Virus record (IMG/VR): IMGVR_UViG_3300004151_000006
Span: 124,001 to 188,000 of that record
Reading direction: 5' to 3' (one strand)
Length of the DNA stretch: 64,000 nt
Shown here: in pieces, positions 5,101 to 51,332 of the stretch
Numbering within the stretch: the stretch's first letter is position 1
How the letters are laid out: the number at the start of each line of letters is the position of its first letter
The notes under the pieces: model-generated
Database searches by the model: none
Seen by the model: the letters and a program-made list of their open reading frames with translations, nothing else
Told to the model about the DNA's origin: nothing
Position numbers and translations under genes: made by a program

Positions 5101-5113
5101 AAATATATATTAC
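5101..5113 (+). promoter_or_regulatory. Putative early promoter
   Basis: AAATATATATTAC. Confidence 0.7.
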
Positions 5114-5180
5114 TAATATGATCTTGTATTTGAAATCGTTCTTAACCTTTTCTAACCTTTAACCTAAAGGAGTATTCCGC

Positions 5181-5666
5181 ATGGAATTTACTTGCAATGA
5201 TCCGATCCGTGGTGACAAGATCGCCCAGCTCAGTGAGCGACTGGCCCTTGTACTCTACAAGCAGGAAGACGATGCCTATTTCCTCATTTCCGGCATCGTG
5301 ATCGGCAAGGCTGTCCAGCTTCGCTATGATGATGGGCCCGATGGCCATAATCGCATGTCGGTTAGTGTGGAGGATGATTCGATCATCCTCCATCGGTCCT
5401 CTGTCGAGTTTGAGGAATGTCGGCCCAATGTGAAAGGGGATAAGCGTCTGGCCAATATCCCCAAGCTGCTGCAGGGTACCACTGTCTGTGATCTCTTCGA
5501 TGAGGTCGATCAGGCCGTGGCGGAATATGTTCCTTTGATCAAAAACTCCGTGTGTTATAACAACAGCCAGGCATATCCTTACCTTCGGCCCATGGGCTTT
5601 CGTCCGGATTATTCCCAGCAAATGGGCGGTGGTGGTTTTCAGCATCGGCCCACCAGGCGCGGATAG
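5181..5666 (+). CDS. GC-rich early hypothetical protein
   Basis: Early promoter at 5101, AAGGAG RBS, hairpin at 5689; C/G-ending codons. Confidence 0.7.
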   Translation: MEFTCNDPIRGDKIAQLSERLALVLYKQEDDAYFLISGIVIGKAVQLRYDDGPDGHNRMSVSVEDDSIILHRSSVEFEECRPNVKGDKRLANIPKLLQGTTVCDLFDEVDQAVAEYVPLIKNSVCYNNSQAYPYLRPMGFRPDYSQQMGGGGFQHRPTRRG

Positions 5667-5688
5667 ACCATCCATTTAGCCTGCATAT

Positions 5689-5721
5689 CTGGAGCACACC
5701 CCATCATGGGGTGTGCTCCAG
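5689..5721. terminator. Palindrome between convergent genes
   Basis: CTGGAGCACACCCCAT-C-ATGGGGTGTGCTCCAG. Confidence 0.65.
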
Positions 5722-5743
5722 TATACGGTATCTATCTTCATTT

Positions 5744-8305: not shown

Positions 8306-8436
8306 CAGGGAACTCCTTTATATTGATCCATATTATGGAAAGTTTTAGTATAAATAGACAATGTAACTAGATCCTTTTATGTATGGTTAAGATTGACGAT
8401 ACTATAGTCCTATCTACTTCAAAGGAGCATATCGCT

Positions 8437-8766
8437 ATGCGAGCAGATATAACGACCATCTCTCAGACTATCCGTGCAAAGCTGGACCCGCATTTGGCTG
8501 CATTAGCACAGTTAGCACAATCTGAGATTGAGGCTATGCGATTAGCTGATCTCAGTCGTGAAGAAGTATTGCTTAGATTACAAAATTCCATTATTAAAAA
8601 TAACAATATGATATTGAAGACTATGGATATTTTGATAGATTTAAGACCAGATCTTATTGATGTGATGTCTTTAGTATCTGGATTGGAAGCTGCAGTAGAG
8701 AATTATAGTCAACGTATCACTGATATGGAACAGCGTATTTCAATATTAGAACAAACTAGTACTTGA
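8437..8766 (+). CDS. Coiled-coil hypothetical protein
   Basis: AAGGAG RBS before ATG 8437; heptad-like C-terminus. Confidence 0.6.
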   Translation: MRADITTISQTIRAKLDPHLAALAQLAQSEIEAMRLADLSREEVLLRLQNSIIKNNNMILKTMDILIDLRPDLIDVMSLVSGLEAAVENYSQRITDMEQRISILEQTST

Positions 8767-8800: not shown

Positions 8801-8810
8801 CTTTCTTCTG

Positions 8811-8886: not shown

Positions 8887-9702
8887 ATGGTCTCAGATTC
8901 TACACTTGATGGTATCGTGCATGATGTGCGATATAAATTCTCCAATACTGGAGAAGTCATTTCTACATTAGTACTCAATAGACCTGGTCACAATGTACCA
9001 TATTTTTGTGAGATCAAATGTCTTCAATCTGTAAATACACAAATAGCACGTGGTGATCATGTTCGTATCTCTATTTCCACAAATAATACCACTAATGAAA
9101 TAACTATTCTTAAAAGAAATACTGATACTAATTGTTATCCTACATTTATGATTGGATACCCATATTGTCCTTATTGTGGTACTAAGCTTCATTACAATAT
9201 GTTGTATGGTGAATGTCATACCAAGATTTGTCCAGCACAGATATCAAATAATATCCAAATCTTTGCTCAAGGTATTGGTTTATTCTTCCATGGTTCAAAT
9301 AAACTTATATTTAATAATTTACTTACTCGTGGGGTATTTCGGGATTATATTGACATTTTTAATACTACTATAAATACAATACTTGATCTAGATAATATTG
9401 CTATTTCAAATGGAGATATGAATTTATATATCAATACTATTAATTCATTTAAAGGTACTATAAATCTTTTTCAGATACTTAATGGATTTAATATTCCATA
9501 TCTCACTGTACAAGGTATTGATCAGATTATTCAAACACACACATATACCACATTACTTAAAGCAATTCCCTTTAATAAATATCTTTATGTAGATGGTAAT
9601 GCAGATACTTGTTTAAAAGCATTTTTTTCTAATCCATGTAATACAAACTCTTATGCTAAATTAGCTAGTGTGGCTACAGATGGTGTATTTGTCATGGGGT
9701 AA
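8887..9702 (+). CDS. NAD-dependent DNA ligase-like C-terminal fragment (OB-fold, C4 Zn finger, HhH) without adenylation domain
   Basis: VHDVRYKFSNTG (OB), CPYCG...C....CPAQ (LigA Zn finger), LLTRGVFRDYIDIF and LFQILNGFNIPYL (HhH-like); no KxDG. Confidence 0.65.
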   Translation: MVSDSTLDGIVHDVRYKFSNTGEVISTLVLNRPGHNVPYFCEIKCLQSVNTQIARGDHVRISISTNNTTNEITILKRNTDTNCYPTFMIGYPYCPYCGTKLHYNMLYGECHTKICPAQISNNIQIFAQGIGLFFHGSNKLIFNNLLTRGVFRDYIDIFNTTINTILDLDNIAISNGDMNLYINTINSFKGTINLFQILNGFNIPYLTVQGIDQIIQTHTYTTLLKAIPFNKYLYVDGNADTCLKAFFSNPCNTNSYAKLASVATDGVFVMG

Positions 9703-9720
9703 TAGATCCAAAGGTATTTG

Positions 9721-9733
9721 AAATATATATTAT
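9721..9733 (+). promoter_or_regulatory. Putative early promoter
   Basis: AAATATATATTAT. Confidence 0.65.
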
Positions 9734-9909
9734 TAAAATGGAATTACGATATAATTCCAAATATTTATAATGAATTTAAAATCACAAAATAGAATATAGT
9801 GACATTTGAGATTTATAAAAATATATCAATACAAGCCATTCTTTAGGTATTTATACCTACACTGGACTTTGGCTATTCCACCTAACTTTTCATTGGAGGA
9901 GCATCCCTC

Positions 9910-10431
9910 ATGTCGAAGGAAAAAGTTGAAAAGAAAGCCGATGATACACTCATCGTCTCTGCCATGACCTTTCTTATGGACAAAGCTACCTTGGCCGGCG
10001 AAAACATCTACACCGTCAAGGGCTCCGACCTGGAGCGCTTTTACAAGGACAACGGCGTGCCCGTTGAGATCCAGCATCGCACCATGGCGCTCAACGACGC
10101 CGTCCTGGCTGCAGCTATCGATTTCAACGGTGAAAAGCTCAAGGCCCAGATCGAGGCTCTCAAGAAGAGCAATGAAGATCCCGAAGGCGCTGAGAATACC
10201 ATCAAGCTGAACTACTCCGAAGCCACGACTGAAGTCAGCATGGTGCCCCATGTGGCTCGCAAGATCCCGACTCATCTGCCCGGCTGCGCCAATCGTGCTG
10301 ATTCCGGCGATGGCATGTCTCACCACTACGGTGTCACCCAGGTCCGTATCCGCACCAAGGGCCGGGTCACCCGCCGTGACGAACAGCTCACCGATTGGGC
10401 TGATACGATCAAAGAAGCTCTCGGCGTCTAG
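9910..10431 (+). CDS. GC-rich early hypothetical protein
   Basis: Early promoter at 9721, long leader, GGAGGAG RBS, hairpin at 10460. Confidence 0.75.
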   Translation: MSKEKVEKKADDTLIVSAMTFLMDKATLAGENIYTVKGSDLERFYKDNGVPVEIQHRTMALNDAVLAAAIDFNGEKLKAQIEALKKSNEDPEGAENTIKLNYSEATTEVSMVPHVARKIPTHLPGCANRADSGDGMSHHYGVTQVRIRTKGRVTRRDEQLTDWADTIKEALGV

Positions 10432-10459
10432 TATCTCCTTGTCTACCAGCTCTCTTTAT

Positions 10460-10497
10460 CATACAGTGGGTGTGGCCGATGCCACACCCACTGTATG
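10460..10497. terminator. Perfect hairpin
   Basis: CATACAGTGGGTGTGGC-CGAT-GCCACACCCACTGTATG. Confidence 0.6.
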
Positions 10498-10549
10498 GTA
10501 TTTATTTAAAGCTTTTTAAGAATACTAGATATGCAGATCATTTCATTAC

Positions 10550-10562
10550 AAATATATATCAT
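10550..10562 (+). promoter_or_regulatory. Putative early promoter
   Basis: AAATATATATCAT. Confidence 0.65.
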
Positions 10563-10619
10563 AAAAATGTATTTAGGAAACTAATCCCAATTAAACCATA
10601 TAGGTCCAAGGAGGACACC

Positions 10620-12014
10620 ATGTCTACTGCTACCAACACCGCTATGGCTGATGATACCATCACCCTGTCCAAGTCCTATTTTAAGGATGCCTTTGGTGCT
10701 CATGTGGAGTACCTCACGGACATCAGTTTGGAAAATTTCGCATTCTACAAGGACAACAAGACCCAGTCCTTTAAAGGTCATGTTTGTGTTGTGGATGGGA
10801 ATCAGTTCCCTGACAACATTGTTGACATTACCATGATCAAGGCACGCCTGGTCATCATCCAGAACTGCCAGACAGTCACCATCGGCCGTATCGATGCTGG
10901 TGATATTCTGATTGGTTCTTGTGGTCAGGTGACGGTTGCTGAGATCAAGACGGACACACTCTGCGCACTCACCATGAATCAGCTTGGCATTGGTGAGATT
11001 CACTGTGATAAGTTCGTGGGTTTCATCAACATGGGGCTCATTAAGAAAGGTATGATCTCGGATATGGCCATTTGTGCCACCGGACTGCAGTATGACTGCC
11101 GTGTTCTGGATCCCCAGATCTACACCCACCACTTCACCCTCTTTGGTGAAAACACTTTCAACTCGGAGAAGCTCGAGTTCTTCATGAACACCAAGAGCCT
11201 TTCCAAGCTGGATCGTTGGTTGTTCAATCACGATCCTGAAGATGCGGAATATTCCATCCGAAATGAAGTCTTGACAGGTTTCGTTTTTGAGTACACCATA
11301 TGCGGGGATTTCCCTGTGCAGTGGCTCATGGATCCTGGAAACATCCCGCATTTTACCTCTCTCATGGACAAGTATGATTACTTGACCAAGACCACTGAAT
11401 CCCAACGCCGTAAGGCCATTGATGCCATCAAGATCGAAGATGGTGTCTTTGACTTTATCGGAGATATCTGGGGTGGGGTCTGTGAGACAGTCGGCGACAT
11501 CACGGACACCGTCGGTGATTTCGTCTTTGGTGCACGTGATACTGGGGAAAAGAAAGACCCCGTGGTGGAGGAAGCTAAGGCCATTCTTGAAGAGGCTTTC
11601 TCTGATGAAGAGGAAGAAAAAGTTGAAGACCCCGATGCACCCGATACACCCTGGATGGATCCCAACATCATGCATGTGCGTCCTTCTGGGACATACAAGG
11701 AACGTGATATCACCGAAGCTGACATCAAGGAGATGATGGATGCTGGGATTATCCCCCCCACTGCAACAGTCCAACCCCAACCACAAGCATCTACTGTCGA
11801 TGTGGACATGGATCCGATGACAGCAGATCCGGCATCGACTCCGACCTTTGTGCCCCACATCATTGGTGGTACTCCGGCTGCGGCACCCATGGTGGGAATG
11901 GGTATTACCCCAATCATGGAAGATCCCATGGCCAATGAGATCATGGGGGATCTTCGTGTCAAGACCAGTGAGGAGTCGACTGCTCCCACCCCCAATGGCA
12001 AGAAAAAGAAGTAA
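10620..12014 (+). CDS. Early protein with beta-solenoid-like N-terminus and acidic/Pro-rich disordered C-terminus
   Basis: AAGGAGG RBS before ATG 10620; repeating short beta-strand pattern; promoter at 10550. Confidence 0.7.
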   Translation: MSTATNTAMADDTITLSKSYFKDAFGAHVEYLTDISLENFAFYKDNKTQSFKGHVCVVDGNQFPDNIVDITMIKARLVIIQNCQTVTIGRIDAGDILIGSCGQVTVAEIKTDTLCALTMNQLGIGEIHCDKFVGFINMGLIKKGMISDMAICATGLQYDCRVLDPQIYTHHFTLFGENTFNSEKLEFFMNTKSLSKLDRWLFNHDPEDAEYSIRNEVLTGFVFEYTICGDFPVQWLMDPGNIPHFTSLMDKYDYLTKTTESQRRKAIDAIKIEDGVFDFIGDIWGGVCETVGDITDTVGDFVFGARDTGEKKDPVVEEAKAILEEAFSDEEEEKVEDPDAPDTPWMDPNIMHVRPSGTYKERDITEADIKEMMDAGIIPPTATVQPQPQASTVDVDMDPMTADPASTPTFVPHIIGGTPAAAPMVGMGITPIMEDPMANEIMGDLRVKTSEESTAPTPNGKKKK

Positions 12015-12021
12015 CAGTATA

Positions 12022-12049
12022 GGGGTAGGGGCCACATGGCCCCTACCCC
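12022..12049. terminator. Hairpin between convergent genes
   Basis: GGGGTAGGGGCCA-CA-TGGCCCCTACCCC. Confidence 0.65.
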
Positions 12050-12053
12050 ATGC

Positions 12054-12611
12054 TTATCCGAGACATAATCCTTTTTTGACAAAAGCATATCCTACAGCGA
12101 TAGCATCTGCTTCATGTTCTACCATTTTATCAAAAGCTATTTGTTTAGCAGCTTTAAATGAGATTTGTGGATTATTTAAGATAGCATCTTGGATAGTGAG
12201 TTTATCTGCATGTCCATTGCCGGTGACTATGGATTTGATACCACAGGGTGAGATTTTAAATAAACCTAACTTATAATCCATTACAATGCGTGCAATTGTA
12301 TTGATACATAATTTTAATGCAATATAGGGATGTACACCACGTCTTGGATTATAAAAGGCATCTTCAGATACTACATACTGAGGACTATATGTCTCCATTA
12401 ATTCACGCACCACATCTTCAATAAGAAACAGTGACATAAGCTGTCTAGTATAGACGACGCATTCTTCTTTTAATTTTTTTGCATTATCACTGGGTTTGAC
12501 ATTACCAAATTTGATGACTTGAAATTTATCAGTATCAAATTGATATTGTGATACCGCCCAACCAAGACAGGTGGTCCCAGGATCAAATGACAAGATACGT
12601 GTATGTCTCAT
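12054..12611 (-). CDS. ruvC: RuvC-like Holliday junction resolvase
   Basis: ILSFDPGTT, VSED, GHADK, HEADAIAV catalytic motifs. Confidence 0.9.
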   Translation of the reverse strand: MRHTRILSFDPGTTCLGWAVSQYQFDTDKFQVIKFGNVKPSDNAKKLKEECVVYTRQLMSLFLIEDVVRELMETYSPQYVVSEDAFYNPRRGVHPYIALKLCINTIARIVMDYKLGLFKISPCGIKSIVTGNGHADKLTIQDAILNNPQISFKAAKQIAFDKMVEHEADAIAVGYAFVKKGLCLG

Positions 12612-12736
12612 GACAGTATATTCCTTGAGCTATGTGATTATCCCAATATGGGAGAATGGTTTGTTCTTTGGACTAATGATACAAAAAGCCCACTAAATTA
12701 TAATACATAAAAATCTATGGATATTTTTACAGTGCT

Positions 12737-12768
12737 AGATGAGATGGGGATTTCTCCCCATCTCATCT
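12737..12768. terminator. Hairpin after the DNA polymerase subunit
   Basis: AGATGAGATGGGGA-TTTC-TCCCCATCTCATCT. Confidence 0.6.
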
Positions 12769-14420
12769 CATTGCTCCATATATTCTGCTCGCCATTCTGC
12801 AGTGATACGTTCATAGATCAATTTTTGCATCTCTTGATAATTTGGTAATCCAAAATATTTATTACCGATGTATACAGCATTTTCTTTAGGTGCAGTCACA
12901 TTACTAAAATAATCTTCAGTATGAGTTTGACCGAATCCTTCTATCCTGACTCCAGTAAATAACTTAGTCTCTTTAGCTATGTTGAATGCTTGGAGTGCAC
13001 TGGGATATTCAGCTTCTACATCTTCATCATTGACCATGATAGTAACTTGTGTTTCATGATCAGATTCTTCTACTGCACGGATACCAATGTTAATAGCTTT
13101 ACTTGGTGGAAGTACTGTACCACCCAACTTAGGTATCATATCATCAAATGGTGTACCCATGATCATACCAGAAGTAGCAATGATTTTTCCTTGAGATTTA
13201 TTATAAAAATACATAGAATTCTTACCCATAGTAGTTTGTTTACTAAAATCACTCAAAAGAGAAGCATCAGTGAGTGCCATCATGGAGACACAATCATTAG
13301 TTTGTTTATGCATGAGTGGGATCAAGATACTATCTTTAATGTTATATGCAACATATCTTAAGAAATTATACATTTGTTCCATATAGTGGTTAGTGATCTT
13401 ACCTAAGCTGATCTTTCCCATACCAAGTATTTTATTAGCAATAGCATTAAGGGTATAATCTGATTCTCTTCCTTTTACTTTACGTAGACGTGCATAGAGA
13501 CACATGCTATCGATAAATTGAGTATATCCAGTACAATTTACCCAATGCCATTTATCTGCAAAATGTTCACAATCTCTATTGTCCACTTTATATTTAAAAT
13601 ATTGATATTTCTTAGGTACATCAGGATGACAAAAGATAGTAGCAGGATCTACACCCATGGATTCTAATCTCTCTAAGATACGTGAGATATCATAATTCAT
13701 ATTCCAAACACCAACAAAATCTGTCTTGTGTTCATGGATGCGATCAAATACCCATTTGATAAGATCAAGTTCAGTATTAGATTCATGTATCACTATTTCA
13801 AATCCATATGTGGATATCTCATCTTTTAATTCTTCATTAATGACTGACCACAATTCTTCTTGAGTAGCAGGTATCCTATTTCTATGTTGATCTACTTTCA
13901 TGAGATATTCTTTCAAATAAGCACAATAGATATATTTTCCAACATTGAAAGAAAAGACATTGATACGTTTTTCACCACGCACTTCGTTTTCAATGTCCAT
14001 ACTACCCACAGATAGTTGAGGTAACATACCTACAGTTTTATCATTATAGCTCTTCCTGATGAGTACCCCAGTATCAATATCTGCTCCATATACATAAGGA
14101 GAATTACACAACTCCCGTAACTGGGTACGTCTACTGTATATATCTAAACTCTTCTTTAGTTTTTCTATCATTTCACTATCTCGCACTGTATATTTTTCTA
14201 GATTCTTTTCATATTCAAATTCCTTTTTATATTTGTGTGATCTGAATCCAGGTTTAGTGATCCAAAATGGTCTACGTGGATCATTGATGATACGGAGATT
14301 GTCTTTCCATGTTTTATTGCCAGCATCATCTATCACTAATACTTTTTCCTTGATGACAAATGCATTAGCATCAGGGCGTTTACAATGAGTAGCATGTATC
14401 CAAAAAGGTATGGTTTGCAT
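12768..14420 (-). CDS. Split family-B DNA polymerase, exonuclease plus motif A subunit (phiKZ gp82-like)
   Basis: ExoI SMDIE, ExoII WNMNYD, ExoIII YNIKD, motif A DVEAEYPS; later polymerase motifs absent. Confidence 0.8.
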   Translation of the reverse strand: MQTIPFWIHATHCKRPDANAFVIKEKVLVIDDAGNKTWKDNLRIINDPRRPFWITKPGFRSHKYKKEFEYEKNLEKYTVRDSEMIEKLKKSLDIYSRRTQLRELCNSPYVYGADIDTGVLIRKSYNDKTVGMLPQLSVGSMDIENEVRGEKRINVFSFNVGKYIYCAYLKEYLMKVDQHRNRIPATQEELWSVINEELKDEISTYGFEIVIHESNTELDLIKWVFDRIHEHKTDFVGVWNMNYDISRILERLESMGVDPATIFCHPDVPKKYQYFKYKVDNRDCEHFADKWHWVNCTGYTQFIDSMCLYARLRKVKGRESDYTLNAIANKILGMGKISLGKITNHYMEQMYNFLRYVAYNIKDSILIPLMHKQTNDCVSMMALTDASLLSDFSKQTTMGKNSMYFYNKSQGKIIATSGMIMGTPFDDMIPKLGGTVLPPSKAINIGIRAVEESDHETQVTIMVNDEDVEAEYPSALQAFNIAKETKLFTGVRIEGFGQTHTEDYFSNVTAPKENAVYIGNKYFGLPNYQEMQKLIYERITAEWRAEYMEQ

Positions 14421-14492
14421 AGATATCGTTACCCCCAGATGTCGTTCAAACTATGACCACTTTAGTTAAAATATCTCATATGAAAAGGAATA

Positions 14493-14526
14493 GGTACACC
14501 AGGCCCCAAAGGGGGCCTGGTGTACC
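14493..14526. terminator. Hairpin after MCP
   Basis: GGTACACCAGGCCCC-AAAG-GGGGCCTGGTGTACC. Confidence 0.65.
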
Positions 14527-14578
14527 GTATCCTAGTGACCTAAGGGAGTGCTGAGGTCAGAGACTGTTGGTGTCGCGA

Positions 14579-16885
14579 TTAAGGATTGGTGGGCAACGGA
14601 AGCGGAGTCTCCGTGGGGACCAGGGAGATCTTCGCGTACAGGTCGATCAGCTTGCTGATGTTGACCACGTTGAGGTAGATGCCGATCGGGTTGGTGATGA
14701 GCGGGAGCTCACGGGCGTTGGCAAAGACGCGCTTGTTGACGCCGCCACCGATCTGCGGGTTGTAGTGGGCAAGATAGGTACCGAAGTCCCAATTGTGCCC
14801 AAAGTTCAAGATAGATTCGGGATCACCTTCACGGTACGGGAGGATGAGGATCTTTTCCCGCATGGTGTTGTAGGTGCACGAGACACACTCGAGGATGACG
14901 CCGTTGGGCAGGATCCGACGGTACTCGACGACTTCACCATCGAAAGCCATGTTCGTATTCCCTTCCATGTGATTATGGATATGGGGAATATTAAACAGGT
15001 TTTCGAGGATGATGTTCGACGTGATCAGCTTGTAGACCGGCTTTTCGCCGCTATTGAGCTGCGTCTTGTAGTAGGAGTTCTGGTGGATCAAGCTGAAGAT
15101 GTTGATCAGCTGGAGTTCCACGTACTGGCGGATATCGCCGAGGATATCCGAAGACCGGATGGAGTCGACGTTCGAGCAGTCGATGGTCGACACGATGACG
15201 TAGGGGTTGACCAGCTGCGAGGCCACGTACTCGAAGCCGACCCGATCCTCGAAGGAGCGGAATTCCGGATTCGGATTCTCGGCCTTGATACGGTCATAGA
15301 CCTGACGCAGGGTCGTGCTGACCAGCTTGAGCATACGATCGTCCTGGCCCAGGCTGATGGCCTCGGTGACGTTGCTCATGACATACTCAGGCAGGGCCTG
15401 CTGCAGAGCATAGTCGACGATGTAGTTACGACCAACCGGGATTTCCCAGGTCTGGGTCTTGTAGTGCGAACGGACGGCCACGTTCGATTTCCGAAGGTTC
15501 TCTTCAGAGAACTTGGAGTCGAGCTTATACGCGATGACTTCGGTCTTGATGTCGGCCATGACCGCAGCCACGGGCGCCGGGACAGCATCGCTATCCGGAT
15601 GATACGCAGTCGGGTAGGCACTGCCGGTGCAACGGGTATCCGCCCACTGCAGAGACAGATAAGGAGACGCATCGATCATGCAGGTGATGGCTTCCCGCGG
15701 AGTGAGATTGGCAAAGATCTCGGTGTCGGTGCCGGCCATGGTCTTGAGGCTCTTGTCCAGCAGGAAGGTCTGGGTGAAGTTCGCCCGACGATCACCGGAG
15801 TAGCGGTTGTTGTTGTGCATGATCAGGCGGGAGCCGTAGTACGGCGAGGTGTCGAACTCGATGTCCTCGGTCTTGCCGCCAGAGATGAAGCGCACGACCA
15901 CGGACTCGAGGATCGCACCATCAGCGATCAAGTCCGTGTAGTCGGTCATGGTAAAGCCGTAGACGTTGGGCAGGCGAGACAGGTCCATCATGTTGGCAGT
16001 CTTGCCGCAACGGATGTAGTTGTCCGCCAGCAGGACGTCGTCGTCGTCGTTGTCCTTCAGGACTTCGATACGCCGCAGGGTGTTGGAGACCATGGAGGGG
16101 TCGCCGTAGAGATGGATAAAGGGCTTGCGATGTTCCTGGGACTGCCGTTCCTTGGAGGTGGGCGCCATGGACTTGTTGAGGTCATAGACTTCGGCCCAGG
16201 GGATCACGTAGTTGATCACGGTCTGGGGAGAGGTCCGACGATGCATCACACGGTTGATCAGCCCACGGTGGAACTTGAGCAACGTGACGGTCATGGCAAT
16301 GCGGATGTCTGGCAGGACGCGGTCGGTATCGGCACCGAAGGCTTCCATACCCGGAGTGAACGAAGTCAAGAACTCGGCATGCAGCGATTCCGGGATGACC
16401 TGATGCAGATCCAGCAGATTCTGCTTCTGATCCGGAAGCGTATCGCTGGTAGCGAAGTGTCGAGACTGCGCCATAGCGCCATTGCCACGGTTGTTGTAGA
16501 GCAGCTGGCCAAGTGCCGGGATAGCCATGGCCTTGATGCGATCATTTTTCAGATCGCAGGAATCGCACAGCACGCCCAGGCTTTCCGGGCTCATGAAGGC
16601 GTCGGTGAACGACATCGTGCTGTTGAAGGCTTCACAGGAAGCGGTGACCTGACCAAAGGCTTCAGCATTGACCAGGCTATCAGAGACCGGGCTGCCGCCG
16701 TTGCCGAGGTTGTTCATGTTGATGAAGTCGGTGACGTTCTTCCAGATCTTGGTGATGAGCTTGCGTTCAGCAGCAGAGACATGGCCACTGTTATTTTTGG
16801 CATATCCCATGGATTCACAGGCAGCCAGAAAACCCTGGTAACCAGCGAGATCACCTGAAGCAGAAGGCATATTGTTGTTAAACAT
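14579..16885 (-). CDS. Major capsid protein (phiKZ gp120-like)
   Basis: About 770 aa, strongly codon-biased, two genes from DnaB as in phiKZ; N-terminal propeptide with G/A/S-x-E sites (PGMEAFG); GGGAG RBS before ATG 16885. Confidence 0.8.
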   Translation of the reverse strand: MFNNNMPSASGDLAGYQGFLAACESMGYAKNNSGHVSAAERKLITKIWKNVTDFINMNNLGNGGSPVSDSLVNAEAFGQVTASCEAFNSTMSFTDAFMSPESLGVLCDSCDLKNDRIKAMAIPALGQLLYNNRGNGAMAQSRHFATSDTLPDQKQNLLDLHQVIPESLHAEFLTSFTPGMEAFGADTDRVLPDIRIAMTVTLLKFHRGLINRVMHRRTSPQTVINYVIPWAEVYDLNKSMAPTSKERQSQEHRKPFIHLYGDPSMVSNTLRRIEVLKDNDDDDVLLADNYIRCGKTANMMDLSRLPNVYGFTMTDYTDLIADGAILESVVVRFISGGKTEDIEFDTSPYYGSRLIMHNNNRYSGDRRANFTQTFLLDKSLKTMAGTDTEIFANLTPREAITCMIDASPYLSLQWADTRCTGSAYPTAYHPDSDAVPAPVAAVMADIKTEVIAYKLDSKFSEENLRKSNVAVRSHYKTQTWEIPVGRNYIVDYALQQALPEYVMSNVTEAISLGQDDRMLKLVSTTLRQVYDRIKAENPNPEFRSFEDRVGFEYVASQLVNPYVIVSTIDCSNVDSIRSSDILGDIRQYVELQLINIFSLIHQNSYYKTQLNSGEKPVYKLITSNIILENLFNIPHIHNHMEGNTNMAFDGEVVEYRRILPNGVILECVSCTYNTMREKILILPYREGDPESILNFGHNWDFGTYLAHYNPQIGGGVNKRVFANARELPLITNPIGIYLNVVNISKLIDLYAKISLVPTETPLPLPTNP

Positions 16886-22891: not shown

Positions 22892-22990
22892 TCCACATTT
22901 CATATACATAAATATCTAGAGTCATCATCTTTTACACAGATACCTTGGATTGCATAAAGGTCACGTACCCCGTGTAGTCCAAGGTATCTT

Positions 22991-23003
22991 GAATATATAT
23001 TAC
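22991..23003 (+). promoter_or_regulatory. Putative early promoter
   Basis: GAATATATATTAC. Confidence 0.7.
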
Positions 23004-23076
23004 TTTATTGATGTCTGGAGTAAAAGTTACTTTAGACCATGTCATCCACTTCAACTTAAGTAAGGAGCTTTCTCAC

Positions 23077-24249
23077 ATGTACAGTGCTAACTTTGCTACC
23101 CCTGCTGCTCGTGAAGAATCCAATGTCAATACCAACGCTGCTCGTGGACCCCGGTACAACATGCCTGCCATCGGCGCCCGTGCGGCCCTGGATTTCCTGA
23201 AGAAGCATTTCCAGGCCCTCAAAGAGGGCACTGAAGATTTTATTCCGACGACGCCCGACGGCGAGTACACCATCGAGACGGCCCTGTCCGGCCATCGCTA
23301 TGCCAACGGCCAGACCGGCATGTGGGAGTGTGGTGGCAGCATGGGAGCCTACGGCGCCTGCAACGTCATTGCCGGCCCCGATGCCCAGCCGCTCAATCCC
23401 TTGCACCAGCACCATGTCAACCCCGAGCATGCCTGCGACAAGCATGTGCTCCTGCCCGTCAAGGAAGGATATATCATGGCGCATGCTGCCTTCGCTGAAG
23501 GCAACGTCCTGATCACCGCTTGGCGCTGCGAGACCCTGGCCTTTGATGCCGGTGACAACCCGGAACGTGGCGGTGTCACCCGCGCCACCTTCAAGCTCAT
23601 CTATGCGGCCGACGGCATCGATGCCTTGCCCCTCTTCCTCGCCGAGGAAGAAGAAGCGACCCCCGACAACCAGATGTTCCAGGCCTTTCTCAAGGCGGCG
23701 TGGACCAAGGCCAACATGTTCCGCTGCCAGTCCCAGGTGTGGGCCTATCCCTGGGCGCCCTGGATCGTCAAGAAGGGGGGTCGTGAGTGGGACCTGCCTG
23801 AAATCGTGGCTGCCCAGGAAGGCATCATCGAAGCCCTGACCGGCGTCGGCCTCTCCGACCCCGATCCCAAATCGGTCGTCACCGACTACAACACCATGGT
23901 CGCCGAAATCGAAGATGCGGCGTCCAAGGCCATCTACAAGTTCCGCAACGCCAGCAGCAACCCCCGTGGACCCCGTGTCCATGTCCTGCAGTACTTTACG
24001 CAGGAAGAAAACAGCTCGAAAGTGCGCGTGACCAACTTCGTGCTGCTGCACAACATCAAGACCCCGAAGATCTTGGCCACCAGGATCTACTACGCGGATC
24101 CCAACACCACCATGCAAAGCGAGCGCCCCGAACCGGCCTACTACCTCAACAATCGCCGGTTCATGCGCTGGGATCTCATCAAGTCCAAATTCGCGGACGA
24201 GGCCACCGGCGGCGAATGCAAGTTCGTCTACGAGTACACCGGCTGCTAG
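23077..24249 (+). CDS. Very GC-rich early hypothetical protein
   Basis: Early promoter at 22991, TAAGGAG RBS, hairpin at 24276. Confidence 0.75.
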   Translation: MYSANFATPAAREESNVNTNAARGPRYNMPAIGARAALDFLKKHFQALKEGTEDFIPTTPDGEYTIETALSGHRYANGQTGMWECGGSMGAYGACNVIAGPDAQPLNPLHQHHVNPEHACDKHVLLPVKEGYIMAHAAFAEGNVLITAWRCETLAFDAGDNPERGGVTRATFKLIYAADGIDALPLFLAEEEEATPDNQMFQAFLKAAWTKANMFRCQSQVWAYPWAPWIVKKGGREWDLPEIVAAQEGIIEALTGVGLSDPDPKSVVTDYNTMVAEIEDAASKAIYKFRNASSNPRGPRVHVLQYFTQEENSSKVRVTNFVLLHNIKTPKILATRIYYADPNTTMQSERPEPAYYLNNRRFMRWDLIKSKFADEATGGECKFVYEYTGC

Positions 24250-24275
24250 CCGGCATTTCCTGATCACATTCTGAC

Positions 24276-24309
24276 ACTAGAGGGTATCCCATGTGGGATA
24301 CCCTCTAGT
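24276..24309. terminator. Perfect hairpin
   Basis: ACTAGAGGGTATCCCA-TG-TGGGATACCCTCTAGT. Confidence 0.6.
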
Positions 24310-43371: not shown

Positions 43372-43400
43372 TAGAGGAGGAGGCTATGCCTCCTCCTCTA
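43372..43400. terminator. Perfect hairpin
   Basis: TAGAGGAGGAGGC-TAT-GCCTCCTCCTCTA. Confidence 0.6.
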
Positions 43401-43422
43401 GATATGCTGATCATTTCATTTT

Positions 43423-43435
43423 AAATATATATCAT
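43423..43435 (+). promoter_or_regulatory. Putative early promoter
   Basis: AAATATATATCAT. Confidence 0.65.
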
Positions 43436-43495: not shown

Positions 43496-43672
43496 GTGCC
43501 CCATTATCTCAATGATCGTATGATCCGGTTGCAGGCCATCTTTGAAACCATCAACTCCCAGTTCGAGGAACAGCAGAAGCAAGGAATGACTTACATCCCC
43601 ACCTTGCCCGGCATGGGTGATCATGAGGCGGCTTACCGTCTCCTTAACGGCAGGGGCATCGCCTGTCAGTGA
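43496..43672 (+). CDS. Small GC-rich early protein (58 aa)
   Basis: Not in the ORF track. Promoter at 43423, AAGGAG RBS, GTG start, MPHYLNDRMIRLQAIFETINSQFEEQQKQGMTYIPTLPGMGDHEAAYRLLNGRGIACQ, hairpin at 43681. Confidence 0.7.
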   Translation: MPHYLNDRMIRLQAIFETINSQFEEQQKQGMTYIPTLPGMGDHEAAYRLLNGRGIACQ

Positions 43673-43680
43673 CCTGTACA

Positions 43681-43708
43681 GTGGAGGGTCCCCATGGGGA
43701 CCCTCCAC
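43681..43708. terminator. Loopless palindrome
   Basis: GTGGAGGGTCCCCATGGGGACCCTCCAC. Confidence 0.6.
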
Positions 43709-47220: not shown

Positions 47221-47247
47221 ACATTACCCATTTCATTTGGAGGAAAA

Positions 47248-48102: not shown

Positions 48103-48124
48103 TATTAGATATAATATACAGGAA

Positions 48125-48149
48125 GTGGAGGGGACAATGTCCCCTCCAC
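48125..48149. terminator. Palindrome between convergent genes
   Basis: GTGGAGGGGACA-A-TGTCCCCTCCAC. Confidence 0.65.
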
Positions 48150-48155
48150 CAACTA

Positions 48156-49316: not shown

Positions 49317-49396
49317 ATGAAATTCTCCTTATATTGTCATACTTTTAAACTATAGGATTGTAAAAACTTATAGGGTCTAATATCCAAAATAACTTG

Positions 49397-49409
49397 AGAT
49401 ATATATTAT
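49397..49409 (+). promoter_or_regulatory. Putative early promoter of chimallin
   Basis: AGATATATATTAT. Confidence 0.65.
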
Positions 49410-49536
49410 CATAGTGGTGATACAATATAAAGATAGATTTTGGCACGACGGTGACCATCATAGTCTGTCCGAACATAGCGTATCACTACGCGTCTGGACG
49501 CATCATTCACCCTTACCTCCATGGAGGAGAACATTC

Positions 49537-51288
49537 ATGGCTCTTACCACTTCGACGACTGGTTCGACTGCTCCCAATGCTCAACCGCAGGGTGCACCCA
49601 CCATGCAGCCCACTGCATCAGCTGCTACCGCTACTGCAGTGTCACCTGATCCGACCATGATCACCACCCCCATCAATACCACTACGGCTCCTCGTCCGGA
49701 AGAGGGTGCTATTCCCAATAAGAAAGATCGCGGCAATATCCGTGACTTGCTCCATAAAGCCCCTATCCCGATGGCCATGAGTGAAGGTGCTACCAAGTAC
49801 ATTGAAGGTCTTAAGAAGTACTACGCTGAACATCAAAATATCGAATACCGAAATATCCGTGTCAATGCTCTGGCCCAGTTGCCCGGCGTCTTCATGGTTG
49901 AATACAATGATCGTGTGGCTCCTCTGATCATGCATGAGATGGTCGGCAGCATGATTGCAGACAACTCTCCTGACACCGTCGTCATGCGTCAGGCTGCCCA
50001 GGTCTATGCCCAGTACGTTCGGGGAAACATCGAAGCTCGGTTTACGCTGCTGCCGGCTGTGGTAATTCATCCTTCGGATTACCACAAGGTCGAGATCATG
50101 GGCAGCATCTTGTCCAACACCCTGTCCAATATCTCCGGACAGGAGTCTATCAATTCAGCAGTTCTCAAAAATGAACCGTTGATCATCTCGATCAACCAGT
50201 CGGAAGTCATGCCGTTCATTGATCGGCTGTCTCCGCATGGCATCCCTGGTCGGCACGACATCGGCTTCAAGCTGAGCCTGGCTCCCCAGAACATGAACTA
50301 CCAGTCCCGCAACGAGATGTTCGGCAACTGGAAAAATGAGATCGAGGATATCGCCGCTGTCACGGCATATACCGAGATTATCACTGGTCCGATTGATCCC
50401 ATGACTGGTATCCCCAAGTTCGTCCCGGTGGTTCATATCACCGACGTTCTGTCGCGTATCCAGGATATCAGGATGTACGTTATCCTGGTTTCCCTGGCTG
50501 CCGAGATCTTCATTCGTCAGGGCCTCTGGGAACACCAGTTCGCCCGTTTTAACAAGGATGAGCCCAACCTTGGATATCTGGTCAATGACCCCAATACCAA
50601 GGACCTCATGTTCATCGATAGTGCTCCGGCACTCAAGAGCTTCATCTATACCTACATGACTCCTCCGGTCCTGGTCGTCGACACCCTGGACGGACGGTCA
50701 CGTATCCCGGATACCGAGTTGACGGTCCTCTCGGCATCTGCGGATCTCAATGCCTACAAGCGGCAGGTCCTGACTAACTGCTTCAAAGAGCTCTGCACCA
50801 CGTTGAGCCTTGATCAGGCCAATGCTCTGGTGCCATTCCAGCCGTATTCTTACGAGAATACCGGATTGGCTTCCATCGGCGGCAGTCTCACGGACACTCG
50901 CGAGATCGACTACCTGCGTCTGGCTACCAACTGGAAGTCTGAAGTCGGCACCGCAGCCCTGCTCATGCAGCGTGCAGCTGGTGCCAAGCCGTCAGATCGT
51001 TTCGATCTGCAGAAGCGCTTCTACAGCGATGCTGTGGCGCTTTACAACAACAACATCATCCGTGTCGATCTGTCTTCCATCGCTGCCATCCAGTCCGAGA
51101 TCAGCCGTAACATCACGTTGGATCGTACGTCCTGGTCTCCCAGCATGGCCAACATCGACCTCACCGGCGCCATCGACGATACCCGCAAGTTCCTCAGTGG
51201 AGCTGGCAGTCTGGGTGTCAATGGCGGAGCCTTCGTCAATATGTCGACCATGTCCATCTATGGTGGGCCTGGTTACTACGGTCGTTAG
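49537..51288 (+). CDS. chmA: Chimallin, phage nuclear shell protein (phiKZ gp54-like)
   Basis: About 583 aa; disordered Thr/Ala/Pro N-terminus and Gly/Tyr C-terminal tail; strong codon bias; early promoter; directly upstream of nvRNAP beta'-N as in phiKZ; LTDTREIDYL. Confidence 0.75.
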   Translation: MALTTSTTGSTAPNAQPQGAPTMQPTASAATATAVSPDPTMITTPINTTTAPRPEEGAIPNKKDRGNIRDLLHKAPIPMAMSEGATKYIEGLKKYYAEHQNIEYRNIRVNALAQLPGVFMVEYNDRVAPLIMHEMVGSMIADNSPDTVVMRQAAQVYAQYVRGNIEARFTLLPAVVIHPSDYHKVEIMGSILSNTLSNISGQESINSAVLKNEPLIISINQSEVMPFIDRLSPHGIPGRHDIGFKLSLAPQNMNYQSRNEMFGNWKNEIEDIAAVTAYTEIITGPIDPMTGIPKFVPVVHITDVLSRIQDIRMYVILVSLAAEIFIRQGLWEHQFARFNKDEPNLGYLVNDPNTKDLMFIDSAPALKSFIYTYMTPPVLVVDTLDGRSRIPDTELTVLSASADLNAYKRQVLTNCFKELCTTLSLDQANALVPFQPYSYENTGLASIGGSLTDTREIDYLRLATNWKSEVGTAALLMQRAAGAKPSDRFDLQKRFYSDAVALYNNNIIRVDLSSIAAIQSEISRNITLDRTSWSPSMANIDLTGAIDDTRKFLSGAGSLGVNGGAFVNMSTMSIYGGPGYYGR

Positions 51289-51306
51289 ACCATCCATCTA
51301 TGGTGG

Positions 51307-51332
51307 GATGCCCCTGCACATGCAGGGGCATC
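51307..51332. terminator. Hairpin after chimallin
   Basis: GATGCCCCTGCA-CA-TGCAGGGGCATC. Confidence 0.6.

What the first reader, a model, noticed from the sequence alone, without database searches (positions are those of the whole stretch)
5101..51332. GC-rich, self-contained expression cassettes embedded in an AT-rich genome
Seen: genes 5181, 9910, 10620, 23077, 43496, chimallin and MCP have strongly C/G-ending codons, unlike their neighbours. All but MCP are single-gene units of early promoter, strong RBS, ORF and palindrome. Inference: core genes (MCP, chimallin) share the bias, so this is translational adaptation of the most highly expressed genes to a GC-rich host, not recent transfer. 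The five unknown proteins are therefore predicted to be very abundant early proteins, with possible roles in host takeover, the early vesicle or nucleus, or anti-defence.
Basis: partly seen in the sequence, partly recalled or inferred. Interest (0 to 1): 0.6.

Follow-up and report, generated by a model that had tools for sequence, protein, structure and literature searches.

The report
Codon-optimised gene cassettes in jumbo phage
In an AT-rich, nucleus-forming giant phage from fresh water, about 16 genes, including the capsid, tail-tube and nuclear-shell genes and five orphan early genes, use a sharply different GC-ending codon set; this is most likely an extreme case of the known tuning of high-demand phage genes to host translation.

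Summary
The genome is 286,688 bp and 34.9% GC. Most genes have GC3 of 0.25 ± 0.05. Seven ORFs in the window reach GC3 0.58–0.78, which is 6–10 SD higher, and the shift starts and stops at the ORF boundaries.

Corrections:
- The capsid gene lies on the minus strand.
- The consensus promoter of g9910 is 186 nt upstream.
- The palindromes (134) and the early-promoter motif (50 copies, all on the + strand) occur across the whole genome. However, the combination of promoter, single ORF and hairpin is strongly enriched among GC-rich genes (7/17 vs 8/220).

The "chimallin" call is now shown by fold. All nine significant Foldseek PDB hits are chimallin/PhuN structures, and the gene sits next to a homolog of the phiKZ gp55 RNA polymerase subunit, as in phiKZ.

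The bias is a codon dialect, not a plain GC shift:
- A-ending four-fold codons fall from 33% to 1–2%.
- TTA, ATA, AGA and CTA vanish, while GCT, GGT, CGT and GAA stay.
- The same ranking (capsid > chimallin > tube > sheath) is seen more weakly in phiKZ.
- Chimallin homologs in relatives are also GC3-rich within AT-rich flanks.

No bacterial relatives were found for the orphans tested. Selection for high expression fits best. Expression level and host were not testable here. The kind is known; the degree is extreme.

The parts
5104..5113 (+). Early-promoter-like core TATATATTAC of cassette 1 (extended motif about 5079-5128)
   Evidence: PWM score 32.9. It is one of 50 sites, all on the + strand.
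5181..5666 (+). g5181: orphan ORF, 161 aa, GC3 0.60. AAGGAG lies 8 nt before the ATG.
   Evidence: LLR +71 bits for the + strand; CAI rank 9 of 297. No Pfam, PHROG, NCBIfam or PDB hit.
5689..5721 (.). Perfect 15-bp hairpin closing cassette 1
9724..9733 (+). Early-promoter-like core upstream of g9910 (186-nt leader)
   Evidence: PWM score 32.3
9910..10431 (+). g9910: orphan ORF, 173 aa, GC3 0.70, with a GGAGGAG RBS
   Evidence: CAI rank 4. No relative in 185,579 species genomes.
10460..10497 (.). Perfect 17-bp hairpin between g9910 and the next promoter
10553..10562 (+). Early-promoter-like core of cassette 3. It belongs to the subclass with ATGCWGATCAT upstream.
10620..12014 (+). g10620: orphan ORF, 464 aa, pI 4.5, with an acidic, Pro-rich C-terminal tail. 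GC3 0.58.
   Evidence: CAI rank 13. Only itself was found among 5.8 billion protein clusters.
12022..12049 (.). Perfect 12-bp hairpin closing cassette 3
14493..14526 (.). Perfect 15-bp hairpin downstream of the MCP stop codon
14579..16885 (-). Major capsid protein, phiKZ gp120 type, 768 aa. GC3 0.77, A-ending four-fold codons 1%.
   Evidence: PF25620 8.6e-23 and phrog_3231; codon data
22994..23003 (+). Early-promoter-like core of cassette 4
   Evidence: PWM score 30.0
23077..24249 (+). g23077: orphan ORF, 390 aa. It has the highest GC3 in the genome (0.78) and Nc 36.5 against 46.7 expected.
   Evidence: (LLR +197 bits). No relatives. Public gene calls carry the antisense ORF instead.
24276..24309 (.). 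Perfect 15-bp hairpin closing cassette 4
43372..43400 (.). Perfect 13-bp hairpin upstream of cassette 5
43426..43435 (+). Early-promoter-like core of cassette 5 (ATGCTGATCAT subclass)
43496..43672 (+). g43496: orphan ORF, 58 aa, GTG start, AAGGAG 9 nt upstream. GC3 0.68.
   Evidence: LLR +25 bits; CAI rank 8
43681..43708 (.). Perfect 12-bp hairpin closing cassette 5
49400..49409 (+). Early-promoter-like core of the chimallin cassette (137-nt leader, conserved in relative L016)
49537..51288 (+). Chimallin (ChmA) homolog, 583 aa, GC3 0.65
   Evidence: AF2 model pLDDT 82.5, pTM 0.80. The nine significant Foldseek PDB hits are all chimallin/PhuN, E 7e-17 to 3e-14. Synteny with a gp55 homolog.
51307..51332 (.). 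Perfect 11-bp hairpin closing the chimallin cassette
51465..53057 (+). Context: an AT-rich (GC3 0.23) homolog of the phiKZ gp55 RNA polymerase subunit (non-virion RNAP by recollection), with its own early-type promoter at 51401
   Evidence: phrog_2987 2.3e-82; blastp to phiKZ gp55 6.5e-34
2994..3383 (+). It is the third gene of an operon, not a single-gene unit.
   Evidence: (LLR +89 bits)

Best explanation
The window belongs to a divergent phiKZ-like, nucleus-forming jumbo phage. Its genome sits near an AT-rich mutational equilibrium. About 16 genes whose products are needed in the largest amounts have been pushed by selection to a second codon dialect, one that the host's own tRNA pool reads efficiently. 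These genes include capsid, tail tube, sheath, chimallin and a set of lineage-specific early genes.

The dialect avoids A-ending codons, and avoids TTA, CTA, ATA, AGA and GTA almost completely. AGA and GTA are among the codons for which the phage carries its own tRNAs; ATA may be a third, if the CAT-anticodon tRNA is in fact an Ile2 tRNA, which was not tested. The dialect uses C- and G-ending codons plus a few retained T- or A-ending ones (GCT, GGT, CGT, GAA).

In the window, the early members are each wired for maximal output. Each has its own virion-RNA-polymerase-type promoter, a Shine-Dalgarno site, a low-GC first ten or so codons, and a flanking hairpin.

Shown: the composition, the codon pattern, the gene identities, the cassette anatomy, conservation in relatives, and the absence of detectable bacterial relatives for three of the five orphans.

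Inferred: that the motif is an early promoter, that the host prefers these codons, and that the five orphan proteins are abundant early proteins.
For: 1. Known high-copy genes carry the bias in order of expected copy number: MCP 0.77, chimallin 0.65, tube 0.61, sheath 0.43. [quoted passage not shown]
2. The bias is more than GC content.
   - A at four-fold sites drops from 0.33 to 0.01-0.02 in the top genes (MCP, g23077, g9910, x22686), while T stays at 0.13-0.24 there.
   - TTA, CTA, ATA and AGA are at or near 0, while GCT, GGT, CGT and GAA are kept.
   - Nc is 36-38 against 47-53 expected from GC3 alone.
3. The five orphans share the dialect of the structural genes. RSCU correlates at r=0.85 with late structural genes and -0.24 with bulk genes. 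Their CAI ranks are 4, 5, 8, 9 and 13 of 297, using a reference built only from MCP, tube and sheath.
4. There is a 5' ramp: GC3 is 0.41 in codons 2-6 and rises to 0.65. The 5' UTRs of the five orphan cassettes are at background GC (0.30-0.43); chimallin's is 0.52.
5. The bias is specific to the gene and conserved.
   - Across 40 homolog pairs with phiKZ, GC3 correlates at r=0.83 (p=3e-11; rank correlation weaker, Spearman 0.35, p=0.03), with the same top order.
   - In phiKZ, MCP is 0.43 and gp54 is 0.42, against a median of 0.26.
   - Chimallin homologs in relatives have GC3 0.79, 0.77 and 0.42 beside AT-rich flanks. The neighbouring gene in the closest relative is 0.31.
   - MCP relatives have GC3 0.34-0.38 against neighbours at 0.13-0.25.
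6. The phage tRNAs read AGA, GTA, GTG and AAY, plus a CAT anticodon.
7. No bacterial relatives were found for g23077, g9910 or g10620.
8. Single-gene units of promoter, ORF and hairpin are enriched among GC-rich genes, p=1.2e-5.
9. Prior work shows host-preferred codons in phage structural genes (PMC2266997) and AT-rich ~10-nt early promoter motifs in RNAP-encoding jumbo phages (PMC7598289).
Against: - There are no expression data. Only DNA runs hold the phage.
- The host is unknown, so the match to host tRNAs or to the host's highly expressed genes is untested.
- Synonymous divergence of chimallin from the 77%-identical relative (0.41 of identical residues) is not lower than in the adjacent AT-rich gene (0.39). 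The changes are directional, with T>C 64 against C>T 24, which suggests the strength of the bias is still shifting between lineages.
- The shift is much larger than in phiKZ or other known phages.
- GC1 and GC2 are also raised. Homologs of the same proteins in relatives show this too.
- MYG1, an enzyme unlikely to be needed in bulk, is also GC-rich.
- g5181 and g43496 were tested for relatives only in family libraries, and g5181 also in viral contigs and the PDB.
Confidence: 0.7

Rival explanations
1. Recent horizontal transfer: the GC-rich ORFs were acquired from GC-rich bacteria or GC-rich phages and have not yet drifted to the AT-rich composition of the genome.
For: - The composition breaks sharply at the ORF boundaries.
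- The five orphans have no relatives in other phages, as expected for accessory cargo.
- One GC-rich gene outside the window, MYG1 (PF03690, 1.9e-66), belongs to a cellular family that is almost absent from phages.
Against: - Core vertically inherited genes (MCP, chimallin, tube, sheath) show the same dialect.
- The ranking is reproduced in phiKZ, and chimallin homologs in three further lineages are each GC3-rich inside AT-rich flanks.
- A-ending codons are avoided far more than T-ending ones, and a 5' ramp is present.
- No relative was found in 185,579 species genomes for g23077 or g9910, nor among 5.8 billion protein clusters for g10620.
- The cassettes use the phage's own promoter and hairpin syntax.
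Confidence: 0.06
2. Selection at the mRNA level rather than on decoding. Depletion of A and of AU-rich stretches makes these transcripts resistant to host or phage ribonucleases that cut AU-rich single-stranded RNA, or alters export or structure. This would raise mRNA half-life rather than translation rate.
For: - A is removed much more thoroughly than T.
- The cassettes are bracketed by stable hairpins that could protect transcript ends.
- The effect is larger than codon selection usually produces.
Against: - Most 5' UTRs stay AT-rich (the five orphan cassettes 0.30-0.43, chimallin 0.52), and the first codons are kept low in GC.
- GAA, GAT and CAT remain the majority codons.
- The depletion targets particular codons (TTA, CTA, ATA, AGA, GTA), including two for which the phage carries tRNAs (AGA, GTA), which points to decoding.
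- This rival would still imply high-expression genes, so it differs only in the step that is optimised.
Confidence: 0.12
3. Insurance against tRNA shortage or tRNA-targeting defence. Essential high-demand genes avoid codons read by U34 tRNAs, which are the usual targets of anticodon nucleases, and avoid codons that depend on phage-encoded tRNAs. They could then still be translated before phage tRNAs accumulate, or after host tRNAs are cleaved.
For: - There is near-total loss of A-ending codons, including AAA (0.76 to about 0.22) and CAA.
- The avoided codons include AGA and GTA, which the phage supplies tRNAs for.
- Early cassettes must be translated first.
Against: - GAA, read by a U34 tRNA, remains the majority Glu codon.
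- Late genes such as MCP show the same pattern as early ones.
- There is no evidence on the host's defence repertoire.
- The pattern is what ordinary translational selection in a host with rare NNA-reading tRNAs would also give.
Confidence: 0.07
4. Artefact: a chimeric assembly, or mis-called frames, creates apparent GC-rich genes.
For: - This is a metagenomic assembly.
- GC-rich stretches carry long mirror ORFs on both strands.
- Public gene calls picked the antisense ORF at 23056-24267.
Against: - Identical sequence occurs in independent runs and samples, on contigs of 43-300 kb.
- The islands are delimited by the phage's own promoters and hairpins.
- Two islands encode verified phage proteins.
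- The codon model resolves the strand decisively.
Confidence: 0.01

Closest known systems
Translational selection on codon usage of highly expressed phage genes (Lucks et al. 2008, PMC2266997; T4 late genes, Cowe and Sharp 1991, recalled from memory)
   Same: Genes for proteins needed in high copy number, especially structural ones, use codons that suit host translation. Codon bias varies non-randomly along the phage genome.
   Different: - The shift is extreme and nearly bimodal: GC3 0.25 for bulk genes against 0.58-0.78.
- It is confined to single ORFs.
- It includes early non-structural orphan genes, each in its own transcription unit.
- The host is unknown, so the match to host preference is inferred.
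Pseudomonas phage phiKZ (AF399011): gp120 capsid and gp54 chimallin
   Same: - It is an AT-rich jumbo phage whose host I recall to be GC-rich.
- MCP (GC3 0.43) and chimallin (0.42) lie in the upper tail, against a median of 0.26.
- The order is the same: MCP > chimallin > tube > sheath.
- Chimallin is followed by the gp55 RNA polymerase subunit gene.
   Different: - The maximum GC3 in phiKZ is 0.55.
- Protein identity to this phage is only 20-36% for 46 genes.
- MCP is detectable only by profile, and chimallin only by fold.
Chimallin / PhuN nuclear shell proteins (PDB 7SQQ, 7SQR, 7SQS, 7SQT, 7SQU, 7SQV, 8FNE, 8IGG)
   Same: Full-length fold match (TM 0.56-0.64, E down to 7e-17), similar size, an early single-gene unit, and synteny with the RNA polymerase subunit gene.
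   Different: - Sequence identity is 13-16%.
- The Pfam copy used here (PF25677.1) detects neither this protein nor 67 relatives.
- It belongs to a large, mostly metagenomic subfamily: 381 representatives at 50% identity.
Early promoters of RNA-polymerase-encoding jumbo phages, recognised by the virion RNA polymerase (Sokolova et al. 2020, PMC7598289)
   Same: A highly conserved AT-rich motif of about 10 nt lies upstream of presumed early units and can be found bioinformatically. Here it precedes chimallin and an RNA polymerase subunit gene.
   Different: The motif sequence is specific to this phage. It has extra conserved tCAt upstream and TGA downstream. Transcription start sites are not mapped.
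Horizontally acquired genomic islands or morons
   Same: Compositionally deviant, self-contained units with their own promoter and terminator.
   Different: - Core phage genes share the composition.
- There are no mobility genes and no cellular homologs.
- The codon pattern is selective rather than donor-like.

Membership tests
Chimallin (ChmA) nuclear shell protein | Fold of solved chimallin protomers | tested here: met
   The AF2 model has pLDDT 82.5. The Foldseek top 9 PDB hits are all chimallin/PhuN, E 7e-17 to 3e-14, TM 0.56-0.64. The next hit is at E 0.017.
Chimallin (ChmA) nuclear shell protein | Match to Pfam PF25677 Chimallin_Phikzvirus | tested here: not met
   There is no hit for the protein or for 68 family members with the local PF25677.1 model. 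A 34%-identical relative, P0005, carries a precomputed PF25677 hit. Sequence-level membership is therefore only transitive.
Chimallin (ChmA) nuclear shell protein | Genomic context as in phiKZ (gp54 followed by the RNA polymerase subunit gene gp55; early gene) | tested here: met
   The downstream gene matches phrog_2987 at 2.3e-82 and phiKZ gp55 by blastp at 6.5e-34. An early-type promoter lies at 49400.
Chimallin (ChmA) nuclear shell protein | Self-assembly into a shell around phage DNA | not testable with these tools
   Needs microscopy or in vitro assembly.
phiKZ-type major capsid protein | Match to PF25620 above the curated cut-off | tested here: met
   80.8 bits against a cut-off of 27, E 8.6e-23; phrog_3231 at 1.8e-15.
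Translationally selected codon bias | Bias concentrated in genes of known high expression | tested here: met
   MCP, chimallin, tube and sheath are at the top. The same order holds in phiKZ.
Translationally selected codon bias | Synonymous pattern not explained by base composition alone | tested here: met
   Nc is 9-15 below Wright's expectation. A4 is 0.01-0.02 while T4 is 0.13-0.24 in the top genes. Specific codons are lost.
Translationally selected codon bias | Preferred codons match the host's tRNA pool or its highly expressed genes | not testable with these tools
   The host is unknown; this is a freshwater metagenome. The only indirect support is that the phage tRNAs cover AGA and GTA, codons avoided in the GC-rich set.
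Translationally selected codon bias | Bias correlates with measured mRNA or protein level | not testable with these tools
   No RNA run holds the phage. Laid contigs carry no expression information.
Translationally selected codon bias | Reduced synonymous divergence in biased genes | tested here: inconclusive
   Chimallin 0.41 against the AT-rich neighbour 0.39, compared with relative L016. The changes are directional (T>C 64, C>T 24). This rests on one gene pair and 131 neighbour codons.
Horizontally transferred island | Close homologs in cellular genomes | tested here: not met
   None for g23077 or g9910 in genome contigs. g10620 found only itself. g5181 found only itself in viral contigs. 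g43496 was checked only against family libraries.
Jumbo-phage early (virion RNA polymerase) promoter | Conserved AT-rich ~10-nt motif upstream of early units, over-represented and strand-consistent | tested here: met
   50 sites against 0.3 expected, all on the + strand. They precede chimallin and RNA polymerase subunit genes.
Jumbo-phage early (virion RNA polymerase) promoter | Transcription start mapped about 10 nt downstream; early timing | not testable with these tools
   No RNA data.

The most novel reading that the evidence does not exclude
The genome deliberately runs two codon dialects. The AT dialect, used by the bulk of genes, depends on phage-supplied tRNAs and U34-reading host tRNAs. 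A second dialect is reserved for the proteins the infection cannot do without in quantity.

This second dialect makes those genes independent of the tRNAs that host anticodon-nuclease defences destroy, and of phage tRNAs that are not yet made. On this reading, the five orphan early cassettes are lineage-specific, very abundant early effectors (shell or early-vesicle partners, or anti-defence proteins), and codon dialect alone can find them.
Probability: 0.08. Interest if true: 0.75.

Novelty: new variant of a known kind. Interest (0 to 1): 0.45.

Why it matters
If the reading is right, codon dialect gives a sequence-only ranking of protein demand in uncultured nucleus-forming phages. It nominates five orphan early proteins, with g23077 and g9910 on a par with the capsid gene, as the most heavily produced unknowns of this virus. 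They are therefore first candidates for shell-associated, early-vesicle or anti-defence functions.

It also shows how far mutation-selection balance can split one phage genome: GC3 0.25 against 0.78.

There are two practical consequences:
- Gene callers mis-strand such genes. The true g23077 protein is absent from public protein collections.

Tried and rejected
- **INPHARED phages.** tblastn or megablast of MCP and chimallin gave no match.
- **Sequence searches of chimallin against the PDB.** Single-sequence and 3-sequence-profile searches gave only a spurious uL30 hit.
- **First AF2 model.** Built from 3 sequences, it was useless (pLDDT 35).
- **hhalign against phiKZ gp54.** Probability was 5-9% only, although the alignment was colinear.
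- **ESM Atlas.** Nothing usable for chimallin or g23077.
- **Family libraries for the five orphans.** Pfam, PHROGs and NCBIfam gave nothing. The PDB gave nothing for the four that were searched (g23077, g10620, g9910, g5181).
- **blastp among genes of this genome.** The orphans have no paralogs.
- **Sequencing runs.** Only four DNA runs from freshwater metagenomes were found, and none was RNA.
- **Read laying on window 9700-15699 (6,000 letters, within the operators' limit).** It gave contigs with zero differences, so a SNP-based test of synonymous constraint was impossible.
- **Variant contigs L044 and L045.** They differ by one SNP in 7.7 kb and by none. The SNP is synonymous in g23077 and non-synonymous in the antisense ORF, which is anecdotal.
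- **A split into "late" and "early" sub-dialects.** I considered it (Pro CCG vs CCC; chi-square p=7e-5) and dropped it. Per-gene profiles form one continuum set by bias strength, and MCP and g23077 are nearly identical.
- **Sau et al. 2005 on phiKZ codon usage.** The paper is not held.
- **Chimallin 5' UTR hairpin.** Only 5 pairs in 4 sequences, too weak to claim.

Full report
**What the window is**

The window is bases 124001-188000 of a single 286,688-bp virus record with inverted terminal repeats, JGI metagenome 3300004151. The whole genome is 34.9% GC. Near-identical contigs occur in other freshwater samples, one of them 300,343 bp long.

By blastp, 46 genes have 20-36% identical homologs in Pseudomonas phage phiKZ. 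These include tail sheath, tail tube, RNA polymerase subunits, a helicase and virion proteins. Pfam finds a phiKZ-type major capsid protein, a tail tube and a phiKZ gp29-type sheath. No record in the INPHARED phage collection is close enough for tblastn. This is a divergent, uncultured relative of the phiKZ-like jumbo phages.

**Checking the observation**

I called ORFs across the whole genome. Bulk genes have GC3 of 0.249 ± 0.052.

| ORF | GC3 |
|---|---|
| g5181 | 0.60 |
| g9910 | 0.70 |
| g10620 | 0.58 |
| MCP | 0.77 |
| g23077 | 0.78 |
| g43496 | 0.68 |
| chimallin candidate | 0.65 |

These values are 6-10 SD above the bulk.

GC-rich stretches carry long mirror ORFs on both strands. I therefore trained a codon model on the four genes of known identity and compared sense with mirror frames. 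The + strand wins for all five unknown ORFs by 25-198 bits.

The GC shift begins at the start codon. The 60 nt upstream of the five orphan ORFs are at 0.30-0.43 GC; chimallin's leader is 0.52.

**Cassette anatomy**

A motif (tCAt, about 11 nt, AAATATATATYAY, 5 nt, TGA) occurs 50 times, against 0.3 expected. Every copy is on the + strand. It precedes g5181, g10620, g23077, g43496, chimallin and the RNA polymerase subunit gene next to chimallin. For g9910 the consensus copy lies 186 nt upstream.

This fits the published description of a conserved AT-rich early-promoter motif of about 10 nt in jumbo phages that encode their own RNA polymerases (PMC7598289). Timing and start sites are not shown here.

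Perfect GC-rich hairpins with stems of 9-21 bp are genome-wide punctuation: 134 against 12 in a shuffle. Shine-Dalgarno pairing is good in the GC-rich genes, but not significantly better than elsewhere (p=0.08). None of the individual elements is therefore special to these genes.

The combination is. Units of promoter, single ORF and hairpin make up 7 of 17 plus-strand genes with GC3 >= 0.5, but only 8 of 220 others (Fisher p=1.2e-5). Six of the seven lie in this window.

**Is the 583-aa protein chimallin?**

Sequence methods failed. A profile search of 1.84 billion representatives found 381 relatives of similar length. With 68 of them as the alignment, AlphaFold2 gave pLDDT 82.5 and pTM 0.80.

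The nine significant Foldseek hits in the PDB are all chimallin/PhuN structures of 201phi2-1, phiPA3 and Goslar (E 7e-17 to 3e-14, TM 0.56-0.64, near full length). The next hit has E 0.017.

The gene directly downstream is a homolog of phiKZ gp55, the RNA polymerase subunit gene that follows gp54 (chimallin) in phiKZ. I accept the chimallin call. The local Pfam model PF25677.1 does not detect this subfamily.

**What kind of bias is it?**

It is not a uniform GC shift.

| Feature | Bulk genes | GC-rich genes |
|---|---|---|
| A at four-fold sites | 0.33 | 0.01-0.02 (MCP, g23077, g9910, x22686) |
| T at four-fold sites | 0.45 | 0.13-0.24 in those four genes (up to 0.38 in weaker ones) |
| TTA | 0.34 | 0-0.04 |
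| ATA | 0.25 | 0-0.01 in the structural and window-orphan sets |
| AGA | 0.43 | 0-0.01 in the structural and window-orphan sets |
| CTA | 0.06 | 0-0.01 |
| GTA | 0.42 | 0.01-0.08 |

GCT, GGT, CGT and GAA remain common, and GAT and CAT remain majority codons.

Other measures agree:
- Effective codon number is 36-38 for MCP, g23077 and g9910, against 47-53 expected from their GC3.
- RSCU of the five orphans correlates at r=0.85 with the late structural genes and at -0.24 with the bulk.
- With a CAI reference built only from MCP, tube and sheath, the orphans rank 4, 5, 8, 9 and 13 of 297.
- The first codons stay low in GC3: 0.41 in codons 2-6, rising to 0.65.

The five phage tRNAs read AGA, GTA, GTG and AAY, plus a CAT anticodon. 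The phage thus supplies readers for two of the codons that its bulk genes use heavily and its GC-rich genes avoid; ATA would be a third only if the CAT tRNA is an Ile2 type, which I did not test.

**Is it gene-specific and old, or recent cargo?**

- In phiKZ itself, median GC3 is 0.26 and the maximum is 0.55. MCP is at 0.43, chimallin 0.42, tube 0.35 and sheath 0.28.
- Across 40 homolog pairs, GC3 in the two phages correlates at r=0.83 (p=3e-11; Spearman 0.35, p=0.03, so the top genes drive it), with the same top order.
- A relative with 77% identical chimallin has GC3 0.79 in that gene and 0.31 in the neighbouring gene. It has the same promoter, leader and hairpin.
- Two more distant chimallin homologs have GC3 0.77 and 0.42 beside AT-rich flanks.
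- MCP relatives at 42-48% identity have GC3 0.34-0.38, against 0.13-0.25 in their neighbours.
- The raised GC1 and GC2 of these genes is also seen in their homologs, so it reflects the proteins and not a donor genome.
- DNA-level scans of 185,579 species genomes found no relative of g23077 or g9910. g10620 found only itself among 5.8 billion protein clusters. Viral contigs return only the same phage.

Recent transfer is therefore a poor explanation for the window's genes.

**Evidence that does not fit neatly**

- Between this phage and the 77% relative, 41% of identical chimallin residues use different codons. The figure is 39% in the AT-rich neighbouring gene, so synonymous sites in chimallin are not visibly more constrained.
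- Those changes are directional (T>C 64, C>T 24), as if the strength of the bias differs between the two lineages.
- Outside the window, MYG1 (PF03690, 1.9e-66; GC3 0.69) belongs to a cellular family almost absent from phages. It is more likely an acquisition. The GC-rich class is therefore probably not uniform.
- Expression could not be tested. Only DNA runs hold the phage, and the laid contigs showed no variation.

**Interpretation**

The most likely mechanism is mutation-selection balance. A strong AT mutational bias sets the bulk composition. Selection for efficient decoding by the host tRNA pool has recoded the genes with the highest demand.

Published work fits this. [quoted passage not shown] Structural genes of many phages use host-preferred codons (PMC2266997).

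By this logic the five orphan cassettes encode abundant early proteins. I put 0.7 on the mechanism and somewhat less on the abundance of each orphan.

Rivals are selection on mRNA stability (0.12), insurance against loss of U34 tRNAs or dependence on phage tRNAs (0.07), recent transfer (0.06) and artefact (0.01).

**The orphans**

| Protein | Size | pI | Notes |
|---|---|---|---|
| g5181 | 18 kDa | 5.4 | |
| g9910 | 19 kDa | 6.0 | |
| g10620 | 51 kDa | 4.5 | Long acidic, Pro-rich tail ending in KKKK |
| g23077 | 43 kDa | 5.6 | |
| g43496 | 6.7 kDa | 6.0 | |

All are predicted soluble. They have no paralogs. None has a hit in Pfam, PHROGs or NCBIfam, and the four searched against the PDB (all but g43496) have no hit there either.

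**Novelty**

The kind is known. The degree is unusual: a split of more than 0.5 in GC3 within one genome, delimited by ORFs. The link to single-gene early units is also unusual. I rate the finding as a new variant of a known kind, with interest 0.45.

Noticed in passing
window 23056-24267 (-) versus 23077-24249 (+): Public protein collections hold the 403-aa antisense mirror ORF (three near-identical entries) and not the true 390-aa + strand protein. Protein-level homology searches for g23077 are therefore blind. The one SNP in a variant contig (L044) is synonymous on the + strand and non-synonymous in the antisense ORF.
   Followed up: yes
window 10532-10562 and 43405-43435; also L005:9735-9765, L005:12864-12894, L010:723-753: A promoter subclass with the extended upstream element ATGCWGATCAT occurs exactly five times in the genome. 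Each copy lies in front of a GC-enriched ORF: g10620, g43496, an ORF with GC3 0.44, the MYG1 unit, and a GC-rich island at genome 228.4-229.4 kb.
   Followed up: partly
window 22969-22982 and L003:1125-1138: The 14-mer CCCGTGTAGTCCAA lies just upstream of the promoters of g23077 and of another GC-rich ORF (genome 41162-41650), and nowhere else in the genome.
   Followed up: no
whole genome (window sites 1242, 2364, 5104, 9724, 10553, 22994, 37426, 43426, 45947, 49400, 51401, 59325, 60467, 63130): All 50 early-promoter-like sites are on the + strand. The 60 minus-strand genes include MCP, tube, sheath, a DNA polymerase B exonuclease-domain protein, a UvsX-like recombinase and an SMC-like ATPase. 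These would then be middle or late genes.
   Followed up: partly
L005:13255-14136 (+) (genome 89255-90136): A MYG1/UPF0160 family gene (PF03690, 1.9e-66) with GC3 0.69 sits in an early-type unit behind a small GC-rich ORF. The family is almost absent from phages, with one weak hit among 50,697 records. This is probably a cellular acquisition and a possible clue to host codon usage.
   Followed up: partly
window 49537-51288 and proteins P0002-P0152: There is a large chimallin subfamily: 381 representatives at 50% identity, 505-654 aa, mostly metagenomic. The Pfam model used here (PF25677.1) does not recognise it.
   Followed up: partly
window 49412-49536: The 137-nt chimallin leader is conserved in the 77% relative. 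It contains a small hairpin with compensatory changes in four homologs, and the RBS sits inside the palindrome CCTCCATGGAGG. The evidence is weak, with only 5 pairs.
   Followed up: partly
L003:2196-2439 and L006:15539-15695: There are five phage tRNA genes: CAT (Met, or possibly Ile2), Arg-TCT, Val-CAC, Val-TAC and Asn-GTT. AGA and GTA are heavily used by bulk genes and almost absent from the GC-rich set.
   Followed up: partly
L002:2686-3537 (-) and window 35390-37084 (-): The GC-rich 283-aa ORF outside the window (GC3 0.77, top CAI) shares a 59-aa segment (46% identity) with a 564-aa tail or virion protein encoded in the window. It is therefore probably a high-copy virion protein.
   Followed up: no
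L010:16286-17008 (+): A 240-aa ORF shows 33% identity over 97 aa to the major capsid protein. It may be a capsid-related paralog or fragment.
   Followed up: no
L010:10496-11380 (+): A GC-rich (0.58) 294-aa ORF has an N-terminal hydrophobic segment and weak SMC/Rad50 coiled-coil matches.
   Followed up: no
phiKZ AF399011, about 4.7-12 kb and 111-114 kb: In phiKZ the highest-GC3 ORFs (0.41-0.55) are small genes clustered near the left end and near 111 kb. They rank above MCP and chimallin, a possible parallel to the orphan cassettes here.
   Followed up: no
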